Shown in pieces: positions 2,404 through 45,068 of a DNA stretch of 64,000 nucleotides. Where the stretch lies: positions 62,001 to 126,000 of the IMG/VR virus record IMGVR_UViG_3300042502_001233; one strand, 5' to 3'. Both the position numbers and the translations under genes were made by a program. Under the pieces are notes generated by a model, which had not been told where the DNA came from, did not search any database, and was given only the letters and a program-made list of their open reading frames with translations. How positions within the stretch are numbered: the first letter of the stretch is position 1; each line of letters begins with the position of its first letter.

Positions 2404-2460
2404 AAAATTTATTTTAAACAAGTATAACGAAAAACAATAAATATGTAAATGATATAAATA

Positions 2461-2490
2461 AAAAAAGCCCCATTGCTGGAGCTTTCTTTT
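2461..2490 (-). terminator. Rho-independent terminator
   Basis: Minus strand AAGCTCC-agcaat-GGGGCTT hairpin followed by a U-tract. Confidence 0.75.
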
Positions 2491-2493
2491 TAT

Positions 2494-2694
2494 TCGATTT
2501 GTCTACAAGATGCGGGGGCATTTACTTCTAAACCCAGTTACGAAGTTTCTCTCGATTCAAAAAATTTTAGAGGTTACAAGAGAGGACCTACGTTAAATAG
2601 TGTATCTGAATATTTGTAGTTTTTTTGTTTGCTGCATACAACTTTTAAGCGACAAATCTAGTTAAGACACGGAGCAGTTTCCCACCCCGCACTT
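2494..2694 (-). ncRNA. Candidate structured non-coding RNA downstream of the TROVE-like gene
   Basis: ORF-free, GC-enriched 200 nt with complementary segments 2496-2503/2651-2658, 2511-2517/2685-2691, 2524-2528/2542-2546, 2549-2553/2580-2584, 2599-2605/2636-2643 and a GAAA-capped hairpin at about 2667-2692; followed by a terminator. Confidence 0.5.
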
Positions 2695-2698
2695 AGTT

Positions 2699-4135
2699 TT
2701 AAACAGTTACGCAAGCGTAACGTTCTGAGCCGATAACAGACATCATCATTGAGTATGGTGTCATCTCTTTACCCGCTAGCAAGCTAGTCAATAAAGATGG
2801 TGAGAAACCACTCACTAAAGCAGTACCGTTTTTATCAAACTGAACTGGTTTGTTGTTATCACCTCTTGACTGAATGTTCCAGTATACAACTTTAGGCATA
2901 GCATAACCAGCTTGAGAGTATTTGGCTTCAATCATTTGTTGTGCAGTTGGGTTCCAACTTCCACCACCAGCGTAGTTGAATTCCATATCCGAAAGGATAA
3001 GAATCATTGTTGGCATTTCTTCTTGAGAAACTTTAGAAGCTCTCGCTTTGTCAAGTATCAAGTTGAACACCGCTTCGATGTTGGTAGACATTGCCCACTC
3101 AGCACGTCTCAATTGGTTGTATCTCTCACTAAGAGAACCTTTCAAGATTTGAAGCGAAGGACGACTTGAGAAAGTCACAAACGCATCTTGGAAAGGACCA
3201 ACGTTTCTTTCTGAAATGTATAACCCCAAAGAGATTGCTACATCCATACAAGTTACACTAGCGCTACCACCAGCTGAACAAGACATTGAACCTGACACGT
3301 CAACAACTGGCAAGAATTTCTCGTTGTTGTTTTCCATGTAGTTAGGTAGTGCACCCCATTGTGCGTTAGCACCTTTAGTGTTACCTTGGTTCAAGCTTTT
3401 GATAATGTCGTATGGGTATACGGCACCAGCGTTTATTTTTGTTTCACCTTTTTCAACAGAGTTAAGGTATTCTTGGAAACGAACCAAGTCATTTTTAGAG
3501 AACGCTTTCATGTAGTCACTCATTGCTTTTGAAGGCAATTTAGAATACTCAATTTTAGAGAATTCTTTAGCACACATCAATTGCTCAACGGTGTTAGAGT
3601 TTTCTACTAACATTTTACGGTAGTCTTTTGGTGACATACCCATGTGTTTTCTCAAAGCTGTCGCCCATCTTTTTTTCTCACGATTACCTACGTTTGGACG
3701 TGGCATCCATTTAGCGCAAAGACCATTTTTATTAGCCAACGCACTAGCGATTAACTCCAAAGCATCTTTTTCCAAAGGTGTACCTACCAATACAAGTAAG
3801 TCATCCCATCTACCGAACTCGGCAATCAAGTGTAAATTTTTACGCAAAGCGTCTGTACGGTTAGCCGCAAGATACTCTATGATATCTCTGAAGATTTTTC
3901 TTTCTCCAGCTCCACCACGAACGTCACGTGCCCAGAACAACAAACGCATTGCTGTTAATGAGTTCTCACCAAATGCTTTCGTGAATACATTGATAAGACG
4001 TTGTTTATCTTGCCCTCTCATAGCACCAATCTGGAAGAATAAATCCACACATAGGTTTAATGATGAAGAGTTAGTAGACATACCGTTTTCAGTCAATGAA
4101 TCTTTAGTTTGCATAGCATTTAATAATGTACTCAT
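2699..4135 (-). CDS. DUF2828 / TROVE (Ro60)-like protein with C-terminal VWA domain
   Basis: TENG..N.SS...CVDLFF, RDVRGGAGER, FGRWDDL, AKWMPR, VVDVSGSM (MIDAS-like), ILSDMEF, VSGFSP motifs; likely start MSTLLN at 4135. Confidence 0.85.
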   Translation of the reverse strand: MSTLLNAMQTKDSLTENGMSTNSSSLNLCVDLFFQIGAMRGQDKQRLINVFTKAFGENSLTAMRLLFWARDVRGGAGERKIFRDIIEYLAANRTDALRKNLHLIAEFGRWDDLLVLVGTPLEKDALELIASALANKNGLCAKWMPRPNVGNREKKRWATALRKHMGMSPKDYRKMLVENSNTVEQLMCAKEFSKIEYSKLPSKAMSDYMKAFSKNDLVRFQEYLNSVEKGETKINAGAVYPYDIIKSLNQGNTKGANAQWGALPNYMENNNEKFLPVVDVSGSMSCSAGGSASVTCMDVAISLGLYISERNVGPFQDAFVTFSSRPSLQILKGSLSERYNQLRRAEWAMSTNIEAVFNLILDKARASKVSQEEMPTMILILSDMEFNYAGGGSWNPTAQQMIEAKYSQAGYAMPKVVYWNIQSRGDNNKPVQFDKNGTALVSGFSPSLLTSLLAGKEMTPYSMMMSVIGSERYACVTV

Positions 4136-4171
4136 AATAATAAAATTTTTGATTGTTAATTTTTGATAATG

Positions 4172-4204
4172 CAAAGATACTACTTTTTATATATGCTTGT
4201 CAAG
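4172..4204 (-). promoter_or_regulatory. Bacteroidota-type promoter (TATCTTTG -7, TTGACA-like upstream element)
   Basis: caaagata at 4172-4179 and cttgtcaag at about 4196-4204 on the plus strand. Confidence 0.65.
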
Positions 4205-4220: not shown

Positions 4221-4820
4221 TTATAAAAAATTTCTAACGTACTGATTTCTATGGTACTTACATATCCCATATTCTTTAATTGCGACTATATGTTGAGGGC
4301 TAAGATACCCTTTATTACCATCCCAAAGGTATATTGGATACAATTTATGTAACTTGGTCATGTATTCATCTCGTCTAACTTTAGCTACGATAGCAGCCGC
4401 AGCTATACAAGTATACGTATCATCACCTTTAGGTACAAGTGTTACTGGAATGTCTTTTGTCCATTTATCCCATACAGTACCATCAACAAGGATTTGTTCT
4501 GGTTCAATTGTTAAACCATCAAGACATCTGTGCATTGTTTTAAACGTTGCTGGGTTAATACCCAAATCGTTTATGTCTTGAATAGTACTGGCCAAACAAA
4601 CAACATCCAGCGCGTTATCTAAAATAAGTTTATACGCATCGTTACGTTGTTTTTCGGTAAGTTGTTTGGAATCTCTTATAAGTTCAGACTTGAATCCTTT
4701 TGGCATGATTACCGCTGCCGTCACAACTGGACCAGCACCACAACCTCTACCTACTTCATCTAACCCAGCAACATAATCATAGTCACCGAAATCCTCAAGA
4801 ATTTTTTTTATCTTAGCCAT
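4221..4820 (-). CDS. rnhB: Ribonuclease HII
   Basis: GLDEVGRGCGAGPVV, DSKQL, LVDG, KGDD...IAAAAIVAKVRRD, NKGY motifs. Confidence 0.95.
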   Translation of the reverse strand: MAKIKKILEDFGDYDYVAGLDEVGRGCGAGPVVTAAVIMPKGFKSELIRDSKQLTEKQRNDAYKLILDNALDVVCLASTIQDINDLGINPATFKTMHRCLDGLTIEPEQILVDGTVWDKWTKDIPVTLVPKGDDTYTCIAAAAIVAKVRRDEYMTKLHKLYPIYLWDGNKGYLSPQHIVAIKEYGICKYHRNQYVRNFL

Positions 4821-4838
4821 TTTATTATATTAATACGG

Positions 4839-4846
4839 CAAAGATA
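4839..4846 (-). promoter_or_regulatory. Bacteroidota-type -7 element (TATCTTTG) upstream of rnhB
   Basis: Exact TAnnTTTG match 18 nt upstream of the ATG. Confidence 0.6.
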
Positions 4847-4858
4847 CTAAATTAAACC

Positions 4859-5089
4859 TTATACTCCAACTATTTTATAAAGTTTTACAACAATACCAGC
4901 AATCTCAATCTCAAACTCATCATCATAAGTTATAAAGTTCGCTGTTGGATTGTTTTTATAAAACAAAACTTCATTGATTTTTCTATACTCATGTTCTGGT
5001 AGTGTATATGACAACATCAACCCTTTCTTTTGTATTCTTTCGTCAGCAATTATTACCGACACTGTTTCTATTAATTGTTCGTAATTCAT
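4859..5089 (-). CDS. Hypothetical protein
   Basis: ORF adjacent to the upstream gene (1 nt gap). Confidence 0.7.
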   Translation of the reverse strand: MNYEQLIETVSVIIADERIQKKGLMLSYTLPEHEYRKINEVLFYKNNPTANFITYDDEFEIEIAGIVVKLYKIVGV

Positions 5090-5090
5090 A

Positions 5091-5303
5091 TTAAAATTTT
5101 GTAAATATTTTTTTTATTGATGTCATTATTTTTTGACCAAGGGTTGGTTTTTTAATGATAGGTTTTGGTTTCTTTTTTATTTCTTCACCTAAACCAGATT
5201 TAACTTCTTCCACAAATTGGGCTTTTTTTAAAGCTGTCTTGTATTTTTCAGCAAGTATTTCTTTTTCTGCTTGCGCAATTTCTCTATTGTTAGTTACACT
5301 CAT
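5091..5303 (-). CDS. Hypothetical basic protein
   Basis: ORF with ATG; Lys-rich amphipathic C-terminus. Confidence 0.7.
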   Translation of the reverse strand: MSVTNNREIAQAEKEILAEKYKTALKKAQFVEEVKSGLGEEIKKKPKPIIKKPTLGQKIMTSIKKIFTKF

Positions 5304-5395
5304 ATTTTTTTTGTTTTAAATATAGTTATTGTTTTTATTTTTGTAAATAACAAAAATATTTGTATATAAATATTGACTATTTTGTACATAAACCG

Positions 5396-5403
5396 TATAT
5401 TTG
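5396..5403 (+). promoter_or_regulatory. Bacteroidota-type -7 element (TATATTTG) for the plus-strand membrane protein
   Basis: TAnnTTTG 10 nt upstream of ATG 5414, with TTGACT about 20 nt further upstream. Confidence 0.6.
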
Positions 5404-5413
5404 AATAAAAATT

Positions 5414-5749
5414 ATGGTTACAATACTTTTTATTCTGATTTGTTACGGTGCATGTAACAATATTATTTACGGTTCACTTTTTGAAGGATTTAGAAATTTT
5501 TTAGCTAAATTCGGACAAGGTGGTTATAGTTTATATAAGTTATTCACATGTTTTATGTGTTTAGGTACTTGGATGGGTTTTGCTGTTTCAGCGTTAATGG
5601 CTCATTTCTCTTACGCGCATTTAACCCCAATGGGTTCTATTGGTGTGGATAGTTTATACTTAATGATTTTTTTAAATGGATTGGTTTCAGCTGGCGGTGT
5701 CTGGCTGATGCATACTCTACAGGAAGCTCTGGAAGGGGTTTCAGCTTAA
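5414..5749 (+). CDS. Small membrane protein, DUF1360-like
   Basis: Three hydrophobic segments; LFTCFMCLGTW (CxxC-x3-W) motif. Confidence 0.6.
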   Translation: MVTILFILICYGACNNIIYGSLFEGFRNFLAKFGQGGYSLYKLFTCFMCLGTWMGFAVSALMAHFSYAHLTPMGSIGVDSLYLMIFLNGLVSAGGVWLMHTLQEALEGVSA

Positions 5750-43285: not shown

Positions 43286-45068
43286 CGTCTGCTGAGTTTA
43301 CTATAAATTTGTCTGTTATTCTATCTCCAGATTTGTCTGAAGGGTATTTATCGTAAAATAAACCCCAAAGACCATATGGGTCTTGTCTTTTTATATTAAA
43401 ACAATAATTTTGATACATATAATGAGAATTATTTAAAAATGGGTAATCCAAAGGTTTTTCCTCTGATTCGTTAAACCCAATTGGTAATAAATCTCTCCAT
43501 ATATAACTATCTACCGAAGTTTTAATTGAGTAAATCGGTAATTCATCTACACTAGCTTCACCTTCTTCAACGTAGTTAGAAAATTCTCTAATTTTTATCA
43601 AATGATGTGCTTTATAGTAATAACCTTCTTGTCTTGGACCTAAAGTTACTGTTGACGTTAAACCATTAGCTCTTACCATATTCATTGTAGGTGCTGTTTG
43701 CCTATTTATAGTATTAAATCTGTGATGTACATCTGCCAAAACCGTTTCATTCAAAGTTGTTTTATTAAATTCAACCAAATCACCATAGAAGAATTGATTA
43801 CCAATTTGTACGTTGTTTTCCAAAGGTGTATTTGAAACGTATGGTAATAGTGGTGCGTTATGGATTCTGTTAATTACTGGCACATCTCTCAAATAAGTTT
43901 GTGCGTTGGTTTGAGTTAAATTAAATATAAATGGTGTTTCAATACCAGACTTAACTTGTGTAAATAAGAAATTACTATCTGTTTTTATCATTGTAAGATA
44001 TAATTCACTTAGTGGTCTATTTAGGTTATCAGTCAATTCCGAAACATCAATATCTTCATTAAAAACAAATTGAATTATTTGGTCATTAAAAAAATTCTCA
44101 CTAAATCCAGCTTGATATGTTTCATAATCATCAGTTTCAATTACTGGTGAATTTTTTGTTTTTATTTTTGTAAATAATCTAAAATAATATTCAGATTCAA
44201 CATCATTAACAATTTTTCTCATTCTAGAAGTGTTAGATATTGAACCAGTATTTGGTAGGTCAATCACAAAATAATAATCTTTTAAGTTTCCATTGTCTAA
44301 ACCTGTTCTAATAACCACATGGTCACCATTATAACCATTTGTACCAAAAATTCTAACTGTATCACCAATTTCTAAATTGTGTTTACAAGCCATACCTAAC
44401 GCTGTCATATTTCTAGTTGATTGGACCGCCAAAGTGTCATCAACAATTAACAAACCGTTACCATTGGTTGTGTCATAAACCATTTTATGTTTTGTGTCTG
44501 CACTAACTGGATATGTTATAGTCAATTCCCAATTTTTAACAAAATTTGGAAGTGTAGCGCTAGGATTAGCTACAAATGGGTGATAGTCTGGTAAAAAAGA
44601 AAATCTTTCTCTTTTAGGTTCCATATCAAAATAATTACATAACGAAGCAGATGCTATATTTGGGTTATAATAACCAAACCAACCATCTTTTTCTTTTAAA
44701 AAAGTTTTAAAAGCTAAATCGTAAGTTAAATCTTCATCATCATTAACACTTTGGTCTCTTGGATATGAACGGTCTAAAAATAAACCCTCATTAAACCCAG
44801 CATAGGTATATAAGTTGTTATTGTTAGGGTCGTTTAGATTAAACAACGTATTACTAACCAAAGGGTTTATAGTACCAATTATTCTATAAAACGTACAACG
44901 TTCTCTTTCTGTGTCAAAACGTTTTGCCACATCAACAATCTCATTTATCTGATTGGTTGGTAATAATCTCTCATCACCAACCATGTTGATTTTTAAATAT
45001 GTATCTGTGTTAACGTTATTTGCAGATGTTTGACTGTTTAGTCTATGTTGTGTTCTTTCTGTACTCAT
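43275..45068 (-). CDS. Putative virion structural protein
   Basis: 597-aa ORF in the structural operon. Confidence 0.6.
   Translation of the reverse strand: MSTERTQHRLNSQTSANNVNTDTYLKINMVGDERLLPTNQINEIVDVAKRFDTERERCTFYRIIGTINPLVSNTLFNLNDPNNNNLYTYAGFNEGLFLDRSYPRDQSVNDDEDLTYDLAFKTFLKEKDGWFGYYNPNIASASLCNYFDMEPKRERFSFLPDYHPFVANPSATLPNFVKNWELTITYPVSADTKHKMVYDTTNGNGLLIVDDTLAVQSTRNMTALGMACKHNLEIGDTVRIFGTNGYNGDHVVIRTGLDNGNLKDYYFVIDLPNTGSISNTSRMRKIVNDVESEYYFRLFTKIKTKNSPVIETDDYETYQAGFSENFFNDQIIQFVFNEDIDVSELTDNLNRPLSELYLTMIKTDSNFLFTQVKSGIETPFIFNLTQTNAQTYLRDVPVINRIHNAPLLPYVSNTPLENNVQIGNQFFYGDLVEFNKTTLNETVLADVHHRFNTINRQTAPTMNMVRANGLTSTVTLGPRQEGYYYKAHHLIKIREFSNYVEEGEASVDELPIYSIKTSVDSYIWRDLLPIGFNESEEKPLDYPFLNNSHYMYQNYCFNIKRQDPYGLWGLFYDKYPSDKSGDRITDKFIVNSADDVC

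What the first reader, a model, noticed from the sequence alone, without database searches (positions are those of the whole stretch)
2494..2694. Candidate structured RNA (Y-RNA-like partner?) directly behind the TROVE-like gene, with mutually exclusive folds
A 200-nt GC-enriched, ORF-free stretch lies between the DUF2828/TROVE stop and a terminator. Seen in sequence: perfect complements 2496-2503/2651-2658 and 2511-2517/2685-2691 that cross each other (pseudoknot topology). A local GAAA-capped hairpin (about 2667-2692) only forms on the minus strand via G.U pairs and competes for the same G-run. A bulged helix AGUUGUAU...AUACACU encloses GCAGCAAAC, and there are two further short stems. Ro60/TROVE proteins bind small Y RNAs encoded next to them (established). 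That this is a phage Y-like RNA or a switchable 3' RNA bound by a DUF2828 protein is inference.
Basis: partly seen in the sequence, partly recalled or inferred. Interest (0 to 1): 0.65.

Follow-up and report, generated by a model that had tools for sequence, protein, structure and literature searches.

The report
Phage Y-like RNA beside Ro60-like gene
The stretch behind the gene is a real, conserved, doubly pseudoknotted small RNA, and it carries the hallmark "stem plus CAGCAA" module of a large class of phage RNAs, absent from Rfam 15 and from the papers I searched, that travels with Ro60-shaped DUF2828 proteins, much as Y RNAs travel with Ro60.

Summary
Window 2495-2660, minus strand, encodes a roughly 165-nt structured RNA. 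It lies between the stop codon of a DUF2828/DUF7788 gene (2699-4174, minus) and an intrinsic terminator (2489-2460).

- **Conservation.** The RNA is kept directly behind the same gene in about 40 related viral contigs.
- **Structure.** Covariation supports an outer stem P1, a 5' bulge, an inner stem P2 followed by the conserved motif AUNCNGCAA, and two H-type pseudoknots.
- **Protein.** The predicted protein fold matches Ro60/TROVE rings, although sequence searches do not.
- **Shared module.** "7-bp stem + NNNCNGCAA ... stem + G" recurs on the gene strand in 1 to 7 copies near DUF2828 genes in 12 of 13 annotated phage groups checked. Examples are Felix O1-like, Listeria P100, and Mycobacterium, Staphylococcus, Bacillus and Campylobacter phages. 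Seven further copies sit in or near tRNA clusters of this 362-kb phage. Some of these carry YrlA-like tRNA-mimic domains, and one hits Rfam YrlA below threshold.
- **Control.** tRNA-rich phage T5 has no DUF2828 gene and no such module in its tRNA region.

The proposed mutually exclusive folds are not conserved. Neither Rfam 15 nor the papers searched describe this RNA class.

The parts
2699..4174 (-). Gene for a 491-aa DUF2828 + DUF7788 protein with a Ro60-like ring plus vWA fold and an intact MIDAS DxSxS motif (D292, S294, S296).
   Evidence: Pfam PF11443 at 2.7e-36 and PF25043 at 7.4e-51. PHROG 850 'RNA-binding protein'. AF2 model with pLDDT 74.8. Foldseek top 12 are all Ro60/TROVE, led by 9KOP at E 5e-8 and TM 0.56-0.59. 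Invariant residues.
4174..4203 (-). Sigma-70-like promoter (TTGACA, 18 nt, TATCTT) in front of the gene. It is the likely start of the gene-plus-RNA transcript.
   Evidence: Consensus scan, 10 of 12 matches. No promoter-like site lies between the gene's 3' end and the RNA.
2663..2695 (-). P0: a GAAA-capped hairpin right after the stop codon. In most relatives it is followed by a U run, so it looks like a terminator or mRNA 3' end. It is absent in several lineages.
   Evidence: Folds. In L002 all substitutions in it preserve or improve pairing, one pair on both sides; relatives' sequences also. Alignment A1.
2495..2660 (-). The conserved RNA core, covering the whole covariance-model match.
   Evidence: cmsearch with R1 gives 134.5 bits and E 1e-23. 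It is the only hit in the window and in the 362-kb genome.
2651..2658 (-). P1 5' strand, GAUUUGUC.
   Evidence: Pairs with 2496-2503. Cognate duplex energy averages -8.9 kcal/mol against -4.9 for non-cognate pairs over 32 lineages, with different helix sequences in different lineages.
2496..2503 (-). P1 3' strand, GACAAAUC.
   Evidence: coordinates.
2645..2650 (-). 5'-side bulge or internal loop (GCUUAA) between P1 and P2. It is A-rich and 2-6 nt long in sister RNAs.
2638..2644 (-). P2 5' strand, AAGUUGU (AAGAUGC in most relatives).
   Evidence: Pairs with 2507-2513. On alignment A3, 6 of 7 pairs show changes on both sides and 97.9% of cells are paired. RNAalifold finds the helix on a structure-blind MAFFT alignment.
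2629..2637 (-). J motif AUGCAGCAA (consensus NUNCNGCAA), the most conserved unpaired block and the candidate protein-binding site.
   Evidence: Invariant C, G, C, A, A columns in A1 and A2. The same motif follows a 7-bp stem in hairpin arrays next to DUF2828 genes in 12 of 13 phage groups.
2571..2589 (-). Pseudoknot 1, 5' part. S1 is AGGU (2589-2586) with ACCU (2574-2571). The S2 5' strand CUCUC (2584-2580) lies in the S1 loop.
   Evidence: RNAalifold finds S1, with A-U to U-A swaps in 5 of 13 sequences. S1 is 89.6% paired on the MAFFT alignment A2.
2549..2553 (-). Pseudoknot 1, S2 3' strand GAGAG, pairing with 2584-2580.
   Evidence: More than 12 different helix sequences occupy the same position in relatives, for example UUCCCAGCA/UGCUGGGAA, GCCGCUU/AAGCGGC, UGUCCAU/AUGGACA and UUGUUUCUA/UAGAAACAA. 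Cognate energy averages -7.7 against -4.8 non-cognate.
2516..2545 (-). Pseudoknot 2. S1 is CUUC (2545-2542) with GAAG (2528-2525). S2 is GGGU (2535-2532) with GCCC (2519-2516).
   Evidence: S2 was not part of the model used to align, yet all 4 of its pairs show changes on both sides (GGG/CCC to GAG/CUC, AGG/CCU, AGA/UCU) and 97.2% of cells pair. S1 shows such changes in 2 of 4 pairs. Slid controls pair at 44-55%.
2507..2513 (-). P2 3' strand GCAUCUU, followed by a conserved G at 2506.
   Evidence: The trailing G is kept in almost all modules.
2460..2489 (-). Intrinsic terminator that ends the RNA.
   Evidence: 13-pair stem and a T run. A terminator sits at the same place in all relatives.
2421..2449 (-). 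Promoter-like site (TTTACA, 17 nt, TATACT) of the next gene. It shows that the RNA is not a leader for that gene.
   Evidence: The TTTACA block is conserved in relatives.

Best explanation
Window 2495-2660 (minus strand) encodes a small non-coding RNA that is the cognate, Y-RNA-like partner of the Ro60-fold DUF2828 protein encoded just upstream.

**Shown**
- The RNA is conserved and covaries.
- Its 5' and 3' ends form a stem-bulge-stem (P1, bulge, P2). This carries the conserved 5'-strand motif NUNCNGCAA and encloses an effector domain made of two H-type pseudoknots.
- The basal module 'stem + NNNCNGCAA ... stem + G' is shared by hairpin arrays, YrlA-like tRNA mimics and larger RNAs. These sit on the gene strand beside DUF2828 genes across very distant phages.

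**Inferred**
- The RNA is co-transcribed with the gene from the promoter at 4203-4174 and ends at the terminator 2489-2460. It is probably trimmed 5' of P1, leaving the P0 hairpin as the 3' end of the mRNA.
- The DUF2828 ring binds the P2/J module, as Ro60 binds the conserved 5' strand of the Y RNA stem.
- The double-pseudoknot domain tethers the ring to, or decoys, another factor.
- The ribonucleoprotein acts in RNA or tRNA surveillance and repair, or in counter-defence during infection.
For: **1. Conservation and linkage**
- blastn finds the region at 64-73% identity behind the gene in loci whose proteins are only 70-82% identical.
- Model R1 hits once per locus, always on the gene strand just after the stop, in 43 of 81 sources.
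- Searching 2.9 million viral contigs from the RNA side with the 3' motif gives 25 hits. Of these, 23 lie downstream of a DUF2828 gene on the same strand. One is a truncated remnant behind the gene and one is a chance match inside coding sequence.

**2. Structure**
- P2 and both stems of pseudoknot 2 pair in 96.8% of cells, against 44-55% for slid partners. Twelve of 15 pairs change on both sides, and 0 of 500 shuffles reach these values.
- P1 and pseudoknot 1 stem S2 are supported by cognate versus non-cognate duplex energies.
- RNAalifold finds P2, pseudoknot 1 S1 and pseudoknot 2 S2 on a MAFFT alignment.

**3. Protein**
- The fold is Ro60/TROVE-like with an intact MIDAS motif.
- The genome has no canonical TROVE gene and exactly one DUF2828 gene.

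**4. Shared module**
- A stringent descriptor gives 22 hits on the gene strand of nine annotated phage loci. The controls give 0 on the opposite strand, 2 on reversed sequence and 0.3 on shuffles.
- Further copies occur in Mycobacterium, Staphylococcus, Enterococcus and Bacillus phages.
- Seven more copies lie on the minus strand of this genome, in or near tRNA clusters and outside any substantial minus-strand ORF.

**5. Link to Y RNAs**
- A sister RNA in the same genome matches Rfam YrlA at 41.2 bits, E 3e-8.
- A Felix O1-like copy folds as a basal stem plus V, T, AS and D arms.

**6. Negative control**
- Phage T5 has 25 tRNAs and no DUF2828 gene. Its tRNA region has no such module.

**7. Literature**
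- The Felixounavirus Bas63 homologue gp130 is Ro60-like, lies upstream of the tRNA genes, and counters the Ppl defence system (10.1101/2024.10.10.617714).
- In a P100-like phage, three abundant non-coding transcripts lie within 2 kb upstream of the homologue (PMC12282133). That interval holds three strong promoters, one of which heads the three-hairpin array.
Against: - There is no direct evidence of expression, processing or protein binding for this RNA.
- The conserved motif CNGCAA differs from the Ro60 site GNCGAA/GGUCCGA. The window RNA matches no Rfam family.
- The protein is Ro60-like only by predicted fold: pLDDT 74.8, TM 0.4-0.59, 11-16% identity. Sequence profiles do not reach TROVE, with E 0.82.
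- In the window itself P2 has a U.U mismatch and a G.U pair and is weak at -3.6 kcal/mol. The core fold has z = -1.5.
- Some DUF2828 loci have no RNA next to the gene: L037, L044, L049, L051 and GAP32. One keeps only a remnant (L096). The RNA is therefore not indispensable in cis.
- Most sister modules in this genome lie far from the gene.
Confidence: 0.7

Rival explanations
1. It is a cis-acting 3'-UTR element of the DUF2828 mRNA. It would act as an operator for autoregulation or as a shield against 3' exonucleases, not as a free trans-acting RNA partner.
For: - No separate promoter is found, so the RNA looks co-transcribed.
- In the Vibrio phages nt-1 and 1.081.O a single module sits about 28 nt before the gene's start codon, which looks like an operator.
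- Pseudoknots and a closing stem next to a terminator would resist exonucleases.
Against: - The same module occurs in many copies far from the gene, between tRNA genes and on tRNA-mimic RNAs.
- In most relatives a terminator-like hairpin (P0 plus a U run) separates the ORF from the RNA.
- In L003 a 1-kb mobile insertion separates the gene from the RNA, yet the RNA stays intact.
- This rival does not exclude protein binding and may operate alongside the main explanation.
Confidence: 0.15
2. It is a stable phage RNA that works without the DUF2828 protein. For example, it could decoy or sponge a host nuclease, PNPase or a tRNA-targeting defence. In that case it is only co-located and co-regulated with DUF2828 and the tRNA genes.
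For: - Sister modules sit in tRNA clusters.
- Phages such as T5 carry stable RNAs of unknown function among their tRNA genes.
- Some DUF2828 loci lack the RNA.
Against: - Linkage to the gene holds in lineages with no tRNA genes nearby. These include the IMG/VR loci and Aeromonas LAh_9, and in Mycobacterium Lumos and Staphylococcus BE22 the copies directly abut the gene.
- T5 lacks DUF2828 and also lacks the module in its tRNA region.
- An invariant single-stranded motif next to a stem is typical of a protein site, and the neighbouring protein has the fold of an RNA-binding ring.
Confidence: 0.1
3. It is a riboswitch-like or conformational-switch RNA, or a self-cleaving ribozyme, that uses mutually exclusive folds.
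For: - In the window, 2511-2517 is perfectly complementary to 2685-2691, with a duplex energy of -14.4 kcal/mol.
- AGUUGUAU can pair locally with AUACACU.
Against: - Neither alternative pairing is conserved in 32 lineages, and many lineages lack P0 altogether.
- The RNA matches no Rfam riboswitch or ribozyme family.
- The next gene has its own promoter after the terminator, so there is nothing downstream for a switch to control.
Confidence: 0.03

Closest known systems
Bacterial Y RNAs, especially YrlA (Rfam RF02553), with Ro60/Rsr, as in the Salmonella rsr-yrlBA-rtcBA operon and in Deinococcus Yrn1
   Same: - The RNA is encoded next to a ring-shaped Ro60-fold protein.
- The 5' and 3' ends form a stem-bulge-stem carrying a conserved 5'-strand motif.
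- The interior is a modular effector domain.
- Sister RNAs in the same genome and in Felix O1-like phages carry a T / acceptor-like / D tRNA-mimic domain and hit RF02553.
- Gene neighbours are RNA-repair or tRNA functions: RtcB and an HD phosphohydrolase in P100, an RNA ligase in GAP32, and tRNA clusters elsewhere.
   Different: - The protein belongs to DUF2828/DUF7788, not Pfam TROVE.
- The motif is NNNCNGCAA, not GNCGAA(N)G.
- The effector domain of the window RNA is two H-type pseudoknots, not a tRNA mimic.
- There is no Rfam match.
- Modules often occur as tandem arrays of 2-7 short hairpins.
Thermus phage phiLo Ro60 with Yrl1/Yrl2 (PMC12135203; PDB 9KOP, 9L5Y)
   Same: - It is a phage-encoded Ro60-type ring with adjacent small RNAs that have a stem, bulge, stem layout.
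- It is the best structural match of the window protein.
- The phiLo complex engages host PNPase, which gives a concrete model for the mechanism here.
   Different: - phiLo Ro60 is a recognisable TROVE protein and its Yrls use a CGAA motif.
- Sequence identity to the window protein is about 16%.
- The phiLo RNAs lie upstream of the gene and have no pseudoknots.
Abundant non-coding transcripts of the P100-like Listeria phage CKA15, and gp130 of Felixounavirus Bas63
   Same: - Both phages encode homologues of the window protein, 37-41% identical in their P100 and Felixounavirus relatives.
- The authors of both papers guessed that unidentified Y RNAs exist near the tRNA genes.
- The module arrays I found in P100 (L084 2662-2950) and in a Felixounavirus (L083 3249-4030) fit those guesses.
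   Different: - Neither paper identified the RNAs or the motif.
- The most abundant CKA15 transcript (CKA15_059-061) maps to another, larger RNA at about L084 1493-1984.
- The window RNA is a different, pseudoknotted member of the class.
Stable RNAs of unknown function in phage tRNA clusters (T5 RNA I, III, IV, 1, 2, 2H, 3)
   Same: They are small stable RNAs, some of them tRNA-like, interspersed with phage tRNA genes.
   Different: T5 has no DUF2828 gene, and these RNAs lack the stem + CAGCAA module.

Membership tests
Y RNA (Ro60-associated RNAs; Rfam Y_RNA RF00019 and YrlA RF02553) | Significant match to the family covariance model | tested here: not met
   There is no hit for the window at gathering score, and no Y RNA family appears at E up to 10 in 2380-2800. 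A sister RNA elsewhere in the genome hits YrlA at 41.2 bits, below the gathering score of 69.
Y RNA (Ro60-associated RNAs; Rfam Y_RNA RF00019 and YrlA RF02553) | 5' and 3' ends pair into a long stem with a bulge or internal loop that encloses a large internal domain | tested here: met
   P1 (8 bp), a 6-nt bulge and P2 (7 bp) close the RNA. The helices are supported by covariation.
Y RNA (Ro60-associated RNAs; Rfam Y_RNA RF00019 and YrlA RF02553) | Conserved Ro60-binding sequence on the 5' strand (GGUCCGA in animals, GNCGAA(N)G in bacteria) | tested here: not met
   The conserved 5'-strand block is NUNCNGCAA. The motif definition comes from PMC4201824.
Y RNA (Ro60-associated RNAs; Rfam Y_RNA RF00019 and YrlA RF02553) | Encoded next to a Ro60-type gene | tested here: met
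   The RNA lies immediately 3' of a gene whose product has a Ro60-like predicted fold. Linkage holds for 23 of 25 motif hits found by an RNA-first search.
Y RNA (Ro60-associated RNAs; Rfam Y_RNA RF00019 and YrlA RF02553) | Physically bound by the Ro60-type protein | not testable with these tools
   This needs RIP/CLIP or EMSA.
YrlA subfamily | tRNA-like domain with T arm, acceptor-like stem-loop and D arm | tested here: not met
   ARAGORN finds nothing in the window. The interior is two pseudoknots. Reading pseudoknot 2 as a T-loop conflicts with the covarying CUUC/GAAG stem.
Ro60 / TROVE protein family (for the neighbouring protein) | Pfam TROVE (PF05731) sequence match | tested here: not met
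   Only DUF2828 and DUF7788 match. The genome has no TROVE match. A profile search against PDB sequences gives E 0.82.
Ro60 / TROVE protein family (for the neighbouring protein) | Helical-repeat ring followed by a vWA domain with a MIDAS motif | tested here: met
   Full-length Foldseek matches go to 9KOP, 9L5Y, 2NVO, 1YVR and 9NEN at E 5e-8 to 2e-4. The DxSxS motif is invariant in 31 homologues. This rests on a predicted model with pLDDT 74.8.
H-type pseudoknot | Two helices in which the 5' strand of the second lies in the loop of the first, both supported by covariation | tested here: met
   Pseudoknot 2: both stems covary. Pseudoknot 1: S1, S2. The S2 evidence is register-free duplex energies, not column counts.
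Riboswitch or ribozyme families of Rfam | Match to a model, or conserved alternative structures | tested here: not met

The most novel reading that the evidence does not exclude
DUF2828 proteins and 'stem + CAGCAA' RNAs would form a second, phage-borne Ro60/Y-RNA-like system that has not been recognised. One ring protein would read a common basal module on a whole set of adaptor RNAs with interchangeable heads: plain hairpins, YrlA-type tRNA mimics, the double pseudoknot found here, and domains of 180-270 nt. Each head would direct the ring to a different RNA or enzyme. The system would serve tRNA and RNA repair, or would neutralise host defences such as Ppl. The double-pseudoknot head would then be a new protein- or RNA-docking fold.
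Probability: 0.4. Interest if true: 0.9.

Novelty: new variant of a known kind. Interest (0 to 1): 0.85.

Why it matters
- **An orphan family gets a partner.** DUF2828 proteins are in more than 700 sequenced phages, including workhorses such as Felix O1-like phages, P100/A511, KVP40-like and mycobacteriophages. They are mostly annotated 'hypothetical' or 'RNA-binding protein'.
- **Two papers left the RNA open.** One showed that a homologue counters a defence system, and another found one in virions next to very abundant unexplained RNAs. Both guessed at Y RNAs without finding them.
- **The question becomes testable.** A defined, searchable RNA module with a predicted binding site allows mutation of CAGCAA or P2, pull-down of the protein, and deletion of the arrays.
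- **Annotation is corrected.** Many small 'hypothetical protein' calls laid over these arrays are probably not genes.
- **The Ro60/Y RNA paradigm is extended.** It would now include a second protein family and new effector folds.

Tried and rejected
- **Rfam on the window and 19 related loci.** Nothing but tRNAs, plus one sub-threshold YrlA hit elsewhere in the genome.
- **ARAGORN on the window.** No tRNA or tmRNA.
- **blastn of the RNA against 50,697 phage records.** No match. The whole first 20 kb of the window has no near relative there either.
- **Model R1 on distant phages (nt-1, Felix-like, P100).** Only noise, with E above 0.1. The full RNA is confined to one clade of uncultured phages. 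Only the basal module is universal.
- **MAFFT alignments.** They misplace P1 and pseudoknot 1 stem S2 because of indels, giving 52% and 57% paired cells. I used register-free duplex energies instead.
- **A MAFFT alignment of short module hairpins (A5).** It split the 3' strands, so I built no model from it and used a descriptor with controls.
Tested and rejected.
- **A T-loop reading of GGGUUUAGAAG.** Rejected because GAAG covaries with the upstream CUUC.
- **Sequence-level kinship of the protein to TROVE.** Not detectable.
- **RtcB.** Absent from this genome.
- **CKA15's most abundant transcript.** It maps to a different RNA from the hairpin array.
- **The 158-nt ncRNA of Campylobacter phage NCTC12673.** It lies next to a DUF2828-like fragment but lacks the CAGCAA motif.
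- **Large protein searches.** Not needed and not used.
Full report
**Observation**

The gene next to the finding is on the minus strand (ORF 2699..4174, 491 aa), so the candidate RNA is the reverse complement of 2494-2698.
- The gene product matches Pfam DUF2828 and DUF7788 and PHROG 850 'RNA-binding protein'.
- A 13-pair intrinsic terminator lies at 2489-2460 (-). The next gene has its own promoter-like site at 2449-2421.
- A TTGACA/TATCTT site at 4203-4174 precedes the DUF2828 gene, and no promoter-like site lies between the gene's end and the RNA.
- Thermodynamics alone is weak: z = -1.5 for the 205-nt core, -3.15 with both flanking hairpins, and +0.26 for the plus strand.
- Rfam and ARAGORN find nothing here.

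**Relatives**

The window is part of a 362,018-bp uncultured jumbo phage, and no phage in GenBank is close to it.
- A protein-guided scan of IMG/VR returned 80 loci with 59-100% identical proteins.
- The non-coding stretch behind the gene is alignable by blastn at 64-73% identity in loci whose proteins are only 70-82% identical.
- MAFFT alignments show invariant blocks. One is AAAG-N-UG-N-AU-N-C-N-GCAA near the 5' end. The other is CUUC...GGG..GAAG-UAAA-..CCCC..CAUCUUG near the 3' end.
- A covariance model built on 13 sequences (R1) finds one hit per locus in 43 of the 81 sources. Every such hit is on the gene strand directly after the stop codon. It also finds a single hit in the window and in the whole genome (134.5 bits).
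- I then searched all 2.9 million viral contigs with a 23-nt degenerate 3' motif, without using the protein. This gave 25 hits.
  - 23 lie 130-225 nt behind a DUF2828 gene on the same strand. In one of them the distance is 1,238 nt because of a mobile insertion.
  - One is a truncated remnant 13 nt behind the gene.
  - One is a chance match inside a coding region.

**Structure** (coordinates)
- P0 is a hairpin at 2695-2663, straight after the stop codon. In the 98%-identical L002, all 4 substitutions in it preserve or improve pairing, one pair on both sides. In most relatives it is followed by a U run, and it is missing in several lineages.
- The core has these parts:

| Element | 5' strand | 3' strand |
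|---|---|---|
| P1 | 2658-2651 | 2503-2496 |
| 5' bulge | 2650-2645 | none |
| P2 | 2644-2638 | 2513-2507 |
| Unpaired motif AUGCAGCAA | 2637-2629 | none |
| Pseudoknot 1, S1 | 2589-2586 | 2574-2571 |
| Pseudoknot 1, S2 | 2584-2580 | 2553-2549 |
| Pseudoknot 2, S1 | 2545-2542 | 2528-2525 |
| Pseudoknot 2, S2 | 2535-2532 | 2519-2516 |

- On 35 distinct sequences, P2 and both stems of pseudoknot 2 pair in 96.8% of cells, against 44-55% when partners are slid. Twelve of 15 pairs change on both sides, and no shuffle out of 500 reaches these values.
- Pseudoknot 2 S2 was not in the model used for aligning, yet all four of its pairs covary.
- RNAalifold on a structure-blind alignment recovers P2, pseudoknot 1 S1 and pseudoknot 2 S2.
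- P1 and pseudoknot 1 S2 differ in length and register between lineages, so column counts on MAFFT fail. Register-free tests do show them. Cognate strands pair at -8.9 and -7.7 kcal/mol on average, against -4.9 and -4.8 for non-cognate pairs. More than a dozen unrelated helix sequences occupy the same topological positions.

**The protein**

An AlphaFold2 model built from 31 homologues has pLDDT 74.8.
- Its 12 best full-length PDB matches are all Ro60/TROVE proteins. Thermus phage phiLo Ro60 comes first (E 5e-8, TM 0.56-0.59), followed by Deinococcus Rsr and by frog and human Ro60.
- The vWA MIDAS motif DxSxS is invariant.
- Sequence methods do not connect the protein to TROVE.
- The genome has one DUF2828 gene and no TROVE gene.

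**The wider class**

Reading the flanks of annotated homologues turned up the same signature in very distant phages. It is a stem of about 7 bp, often starting A(A)G and ending CU(U). Three nucleotides and C-N-GCAA (mostly UUACAGCAA) follow its 5' strand, and a G follows its 3' strand.

| Phage | Copies | Position relative to the DUF2828 gene |
|---|---|---|
| Listeria P100 | 3 | Tandem, directly upstream |
| Felixounavirus | 4 | Between the tRNA genes just downstream |
| Klebsiella phage | 4-5 | Downstream |
| Aeromonas LAh_9 | 7 | Upstream |
| Campylobacter NCTC12673 | 2 | Between tRNA-Tyr and the gene |
| Sinorhizobium phiM12 | 1 | Just after tRNA-Lys, about 1.9 kb upstream of the gene |
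| Vibrio nt-1 and 1.081.O | 1 | About 28 nt before the start codon |
| Mycobacterium phage Lumos | 3 | Right after the gene |
| Staphylococcus BE22 | 3 | Right after the gene |
| Enterococcus phage | 1 | Before the gene |
| Bacillus Tsamsa | 3 | One among the tRNA genes, two before the gene |

- Only GAP32 had none within 2.5 kb.
- A stringent descriptor gives 22 hits on the gene strand of nine loci. Controls give 0 on the opposite strand, 2 on reversed sequence and 0.3 in shuffles.
- The more distant IMG/VR loci (L050-L080) carry a longer RNA, about 330 nt, that starts with the same module and contains a second one.
- The window's own genome has 45 tRNA genes, all on the minus strand. It also has seven further RNAs with the layout P1, bulge, AAGAUNN, UUUCWGCAA ... 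NNAUCUU, G, P1'. All are on that strand, in or near tRNA clusters, clear of any substantial minus-strand ORF.
- Two of these seven contain T, acceptor-like and D arms. One hits Rfam YrlA at 41.2 bits, E 3e-8, which is below the curated threshold.
- A Felixounavirus copy folds into the YrlA layout of basal stem plus V, T, AS and D arms.
- Phage T5 has 25 tRNA genes and several stable RNAs but no DUF2828 gene in its record. It has no such module in its tRNA region.

**Interpretation**

The layout, the genomic linkage, the Ro60-like fold and the sharing of one basal module between plain hairpins, tRNA mimics and this pseudoknotted RNA all point one way. These are the RNA partners of DUF2828 proteins, with the stem plus CAGCAA as the protein site. 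This is analogous to the 5'-strand GNCGAA or GGUCCGA site of Y RNAs (PMC4201824).

Gene neighbourhoods add context.

| Neighbour | Phage |
|---|---|
| tRNA clusters | Several phages |
| RtcB ligase and an HD phosphohydrolase | P100 |
| RNA ligase | GAP32 |
| RNase H | Vibrio phage 1.081.O |
| RNase HII | The window |

Published work also fits.
- Bas63 gp130 counters the Ppl defence system.
- phiLo Ro60 and its Yrl RNAs engage host PNPase.
- The CKA15 homologue is found in virions, next to very abundant non-coding transcripts.

These suggest a role in RNA or tRNA surveillance, repair or counter-defence. That role, the binding itself and the processing of the window RNA out of the gene's 3' UTR are all inferences. 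The function of the double-pseudoknot head is unknown.

**Limits**
- The fold assignment rests on a medium-confidence model.
- The descriptor selects for pairing, so its stems cannot be counted as covariation. Its weight lies in the strand, position and control statistics.
- Rfam 15 and the paper searches show no prior description of the motif. The searchable library does not cover all journals.

Noticed in passing
L003:4474-5545 (IMGVR_UViG_3300033074_001410): A cassette of about 1.07 kb is inserted between the DUF2828 stop codon and the RNA. It holds a GIY-YIG/NUMOD3 homing endonuclease on the opposite strand (4487-5236), a tRNA-like sequence (about 5300-5420), and a duplicate of the last ~40 codons of the DUF2828 gene. 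The RNA behind it (5577-5741) is intact.
   Followed up: partly
L096:1-60 (minus strand): This is a decayed copy. Only the 3' third of the RNA remains (the pseudoknot 2 3' half plus the P2 3' strand), starting 13 nt after the DUF2828 stop codon. The RNA can therefore be lost while the gene is kept.
   Followed up: partly
L050:4440-4800, and likewise L052-L080: A longer, GC-richer RNA of about 330 nt follows the DUF2828 gene in the more distant relatives. It begins with a module hairpin (UUGGUUCC-UUACAGCAA...GGAACCAG). A second module (GGAUCG-GUACAGCAA ... CGAUCC) then closes a domain of about 250 nt, followed by a terminator. Rfam has no match. In some loci a small ORF sits between the gene and this RNA.
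   Followed up: partly
L084:1010-1340 and 1460-2000 (Listeria phage P100): Two further non-coding stretches lie behind strong TTGAC...TA-AMT-type promoters. The second corresponds to CKA15_059-061, reported to take up to 67% of phage reads. Neither matches Rfam, and neither shows an obvious CAGCAA stem.
   Followed up: partly
L118:1611-1768 (Campylobacter phage NCTC12673, 7110-7267): The most densely transcribed feature of this phage is a 158-nt ncRNA. It lies directly next to gp012, a 211-aa fragment similar to the DUF2828 protein KVP40.0300. It contains a stem AGGUUAA/UUAACCU followed by G, but the loop starts UACGCAGAC, not the CAGCAA motif.
   Followed up: partly
L082:1460-1500 and L085:2460-2500 (Vibrio phages nt-1 and 1.081.O): A single short module (GACAUU-AUACAGCAA-20 nt-AAUGUC) sits about 28 nt before the DUF2828 start codon. 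The protein may therefore also regulate its own mRNA.
   Followed up: no
Genome C1: 203 and 361992 (minus strand); tRNA list: The same hairpin (GUUGUUU-AUACAGCAA...AAACAAU) occurs at both ends of the record. The 'linear' contig is therefore terminally redundant or circularly permuted. The genome has 45 tRNA genes, all on one strand, including a CUA-anticodon (amber suppressor-type) tRNA at 44350-44423.
   Followed up: no
L117:451-565 (genome about 360750-360864, minus strand): Rfam's tRNA model matches a 115-nt stretch at 47 bits that ARAGORN did not call. It may be an intron-containing or otherwise unusual tRNA-like RNA, and it lies between two YrlA-like RNAs.
   Followed up: no
window 4221-4820 (minus strand): An RNase HII gene (Pfam 1e-33) lies directly upstream of the DUF2828 gene on the same strand. 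A Vibrio phage has an RNase H-like gene directly downstream of its homologue.
   Followed up: no
L086:4039-4499; L123:4055-4144: Small 'hypothetical protein' CDS annotated over the hairpin arrays are probably not genes. In the Klebsiella phage they are MVUOKPPV_CDS0139-0141, on the opposite strand. In the Staphylococcus phage the one affected is BE22_0031.
   Followed up: no
L121:39590-39660 (phage T5, minus strand): A lone hairpin, UACUCUUA-UUACAGCAA-52 nt-UAAGAGUA, occurs in a phage without DUF2828. It overlaps a CDS on the other strand and lies next to a bidirectional terminator. It is probably a chance match.
   Followed up: no
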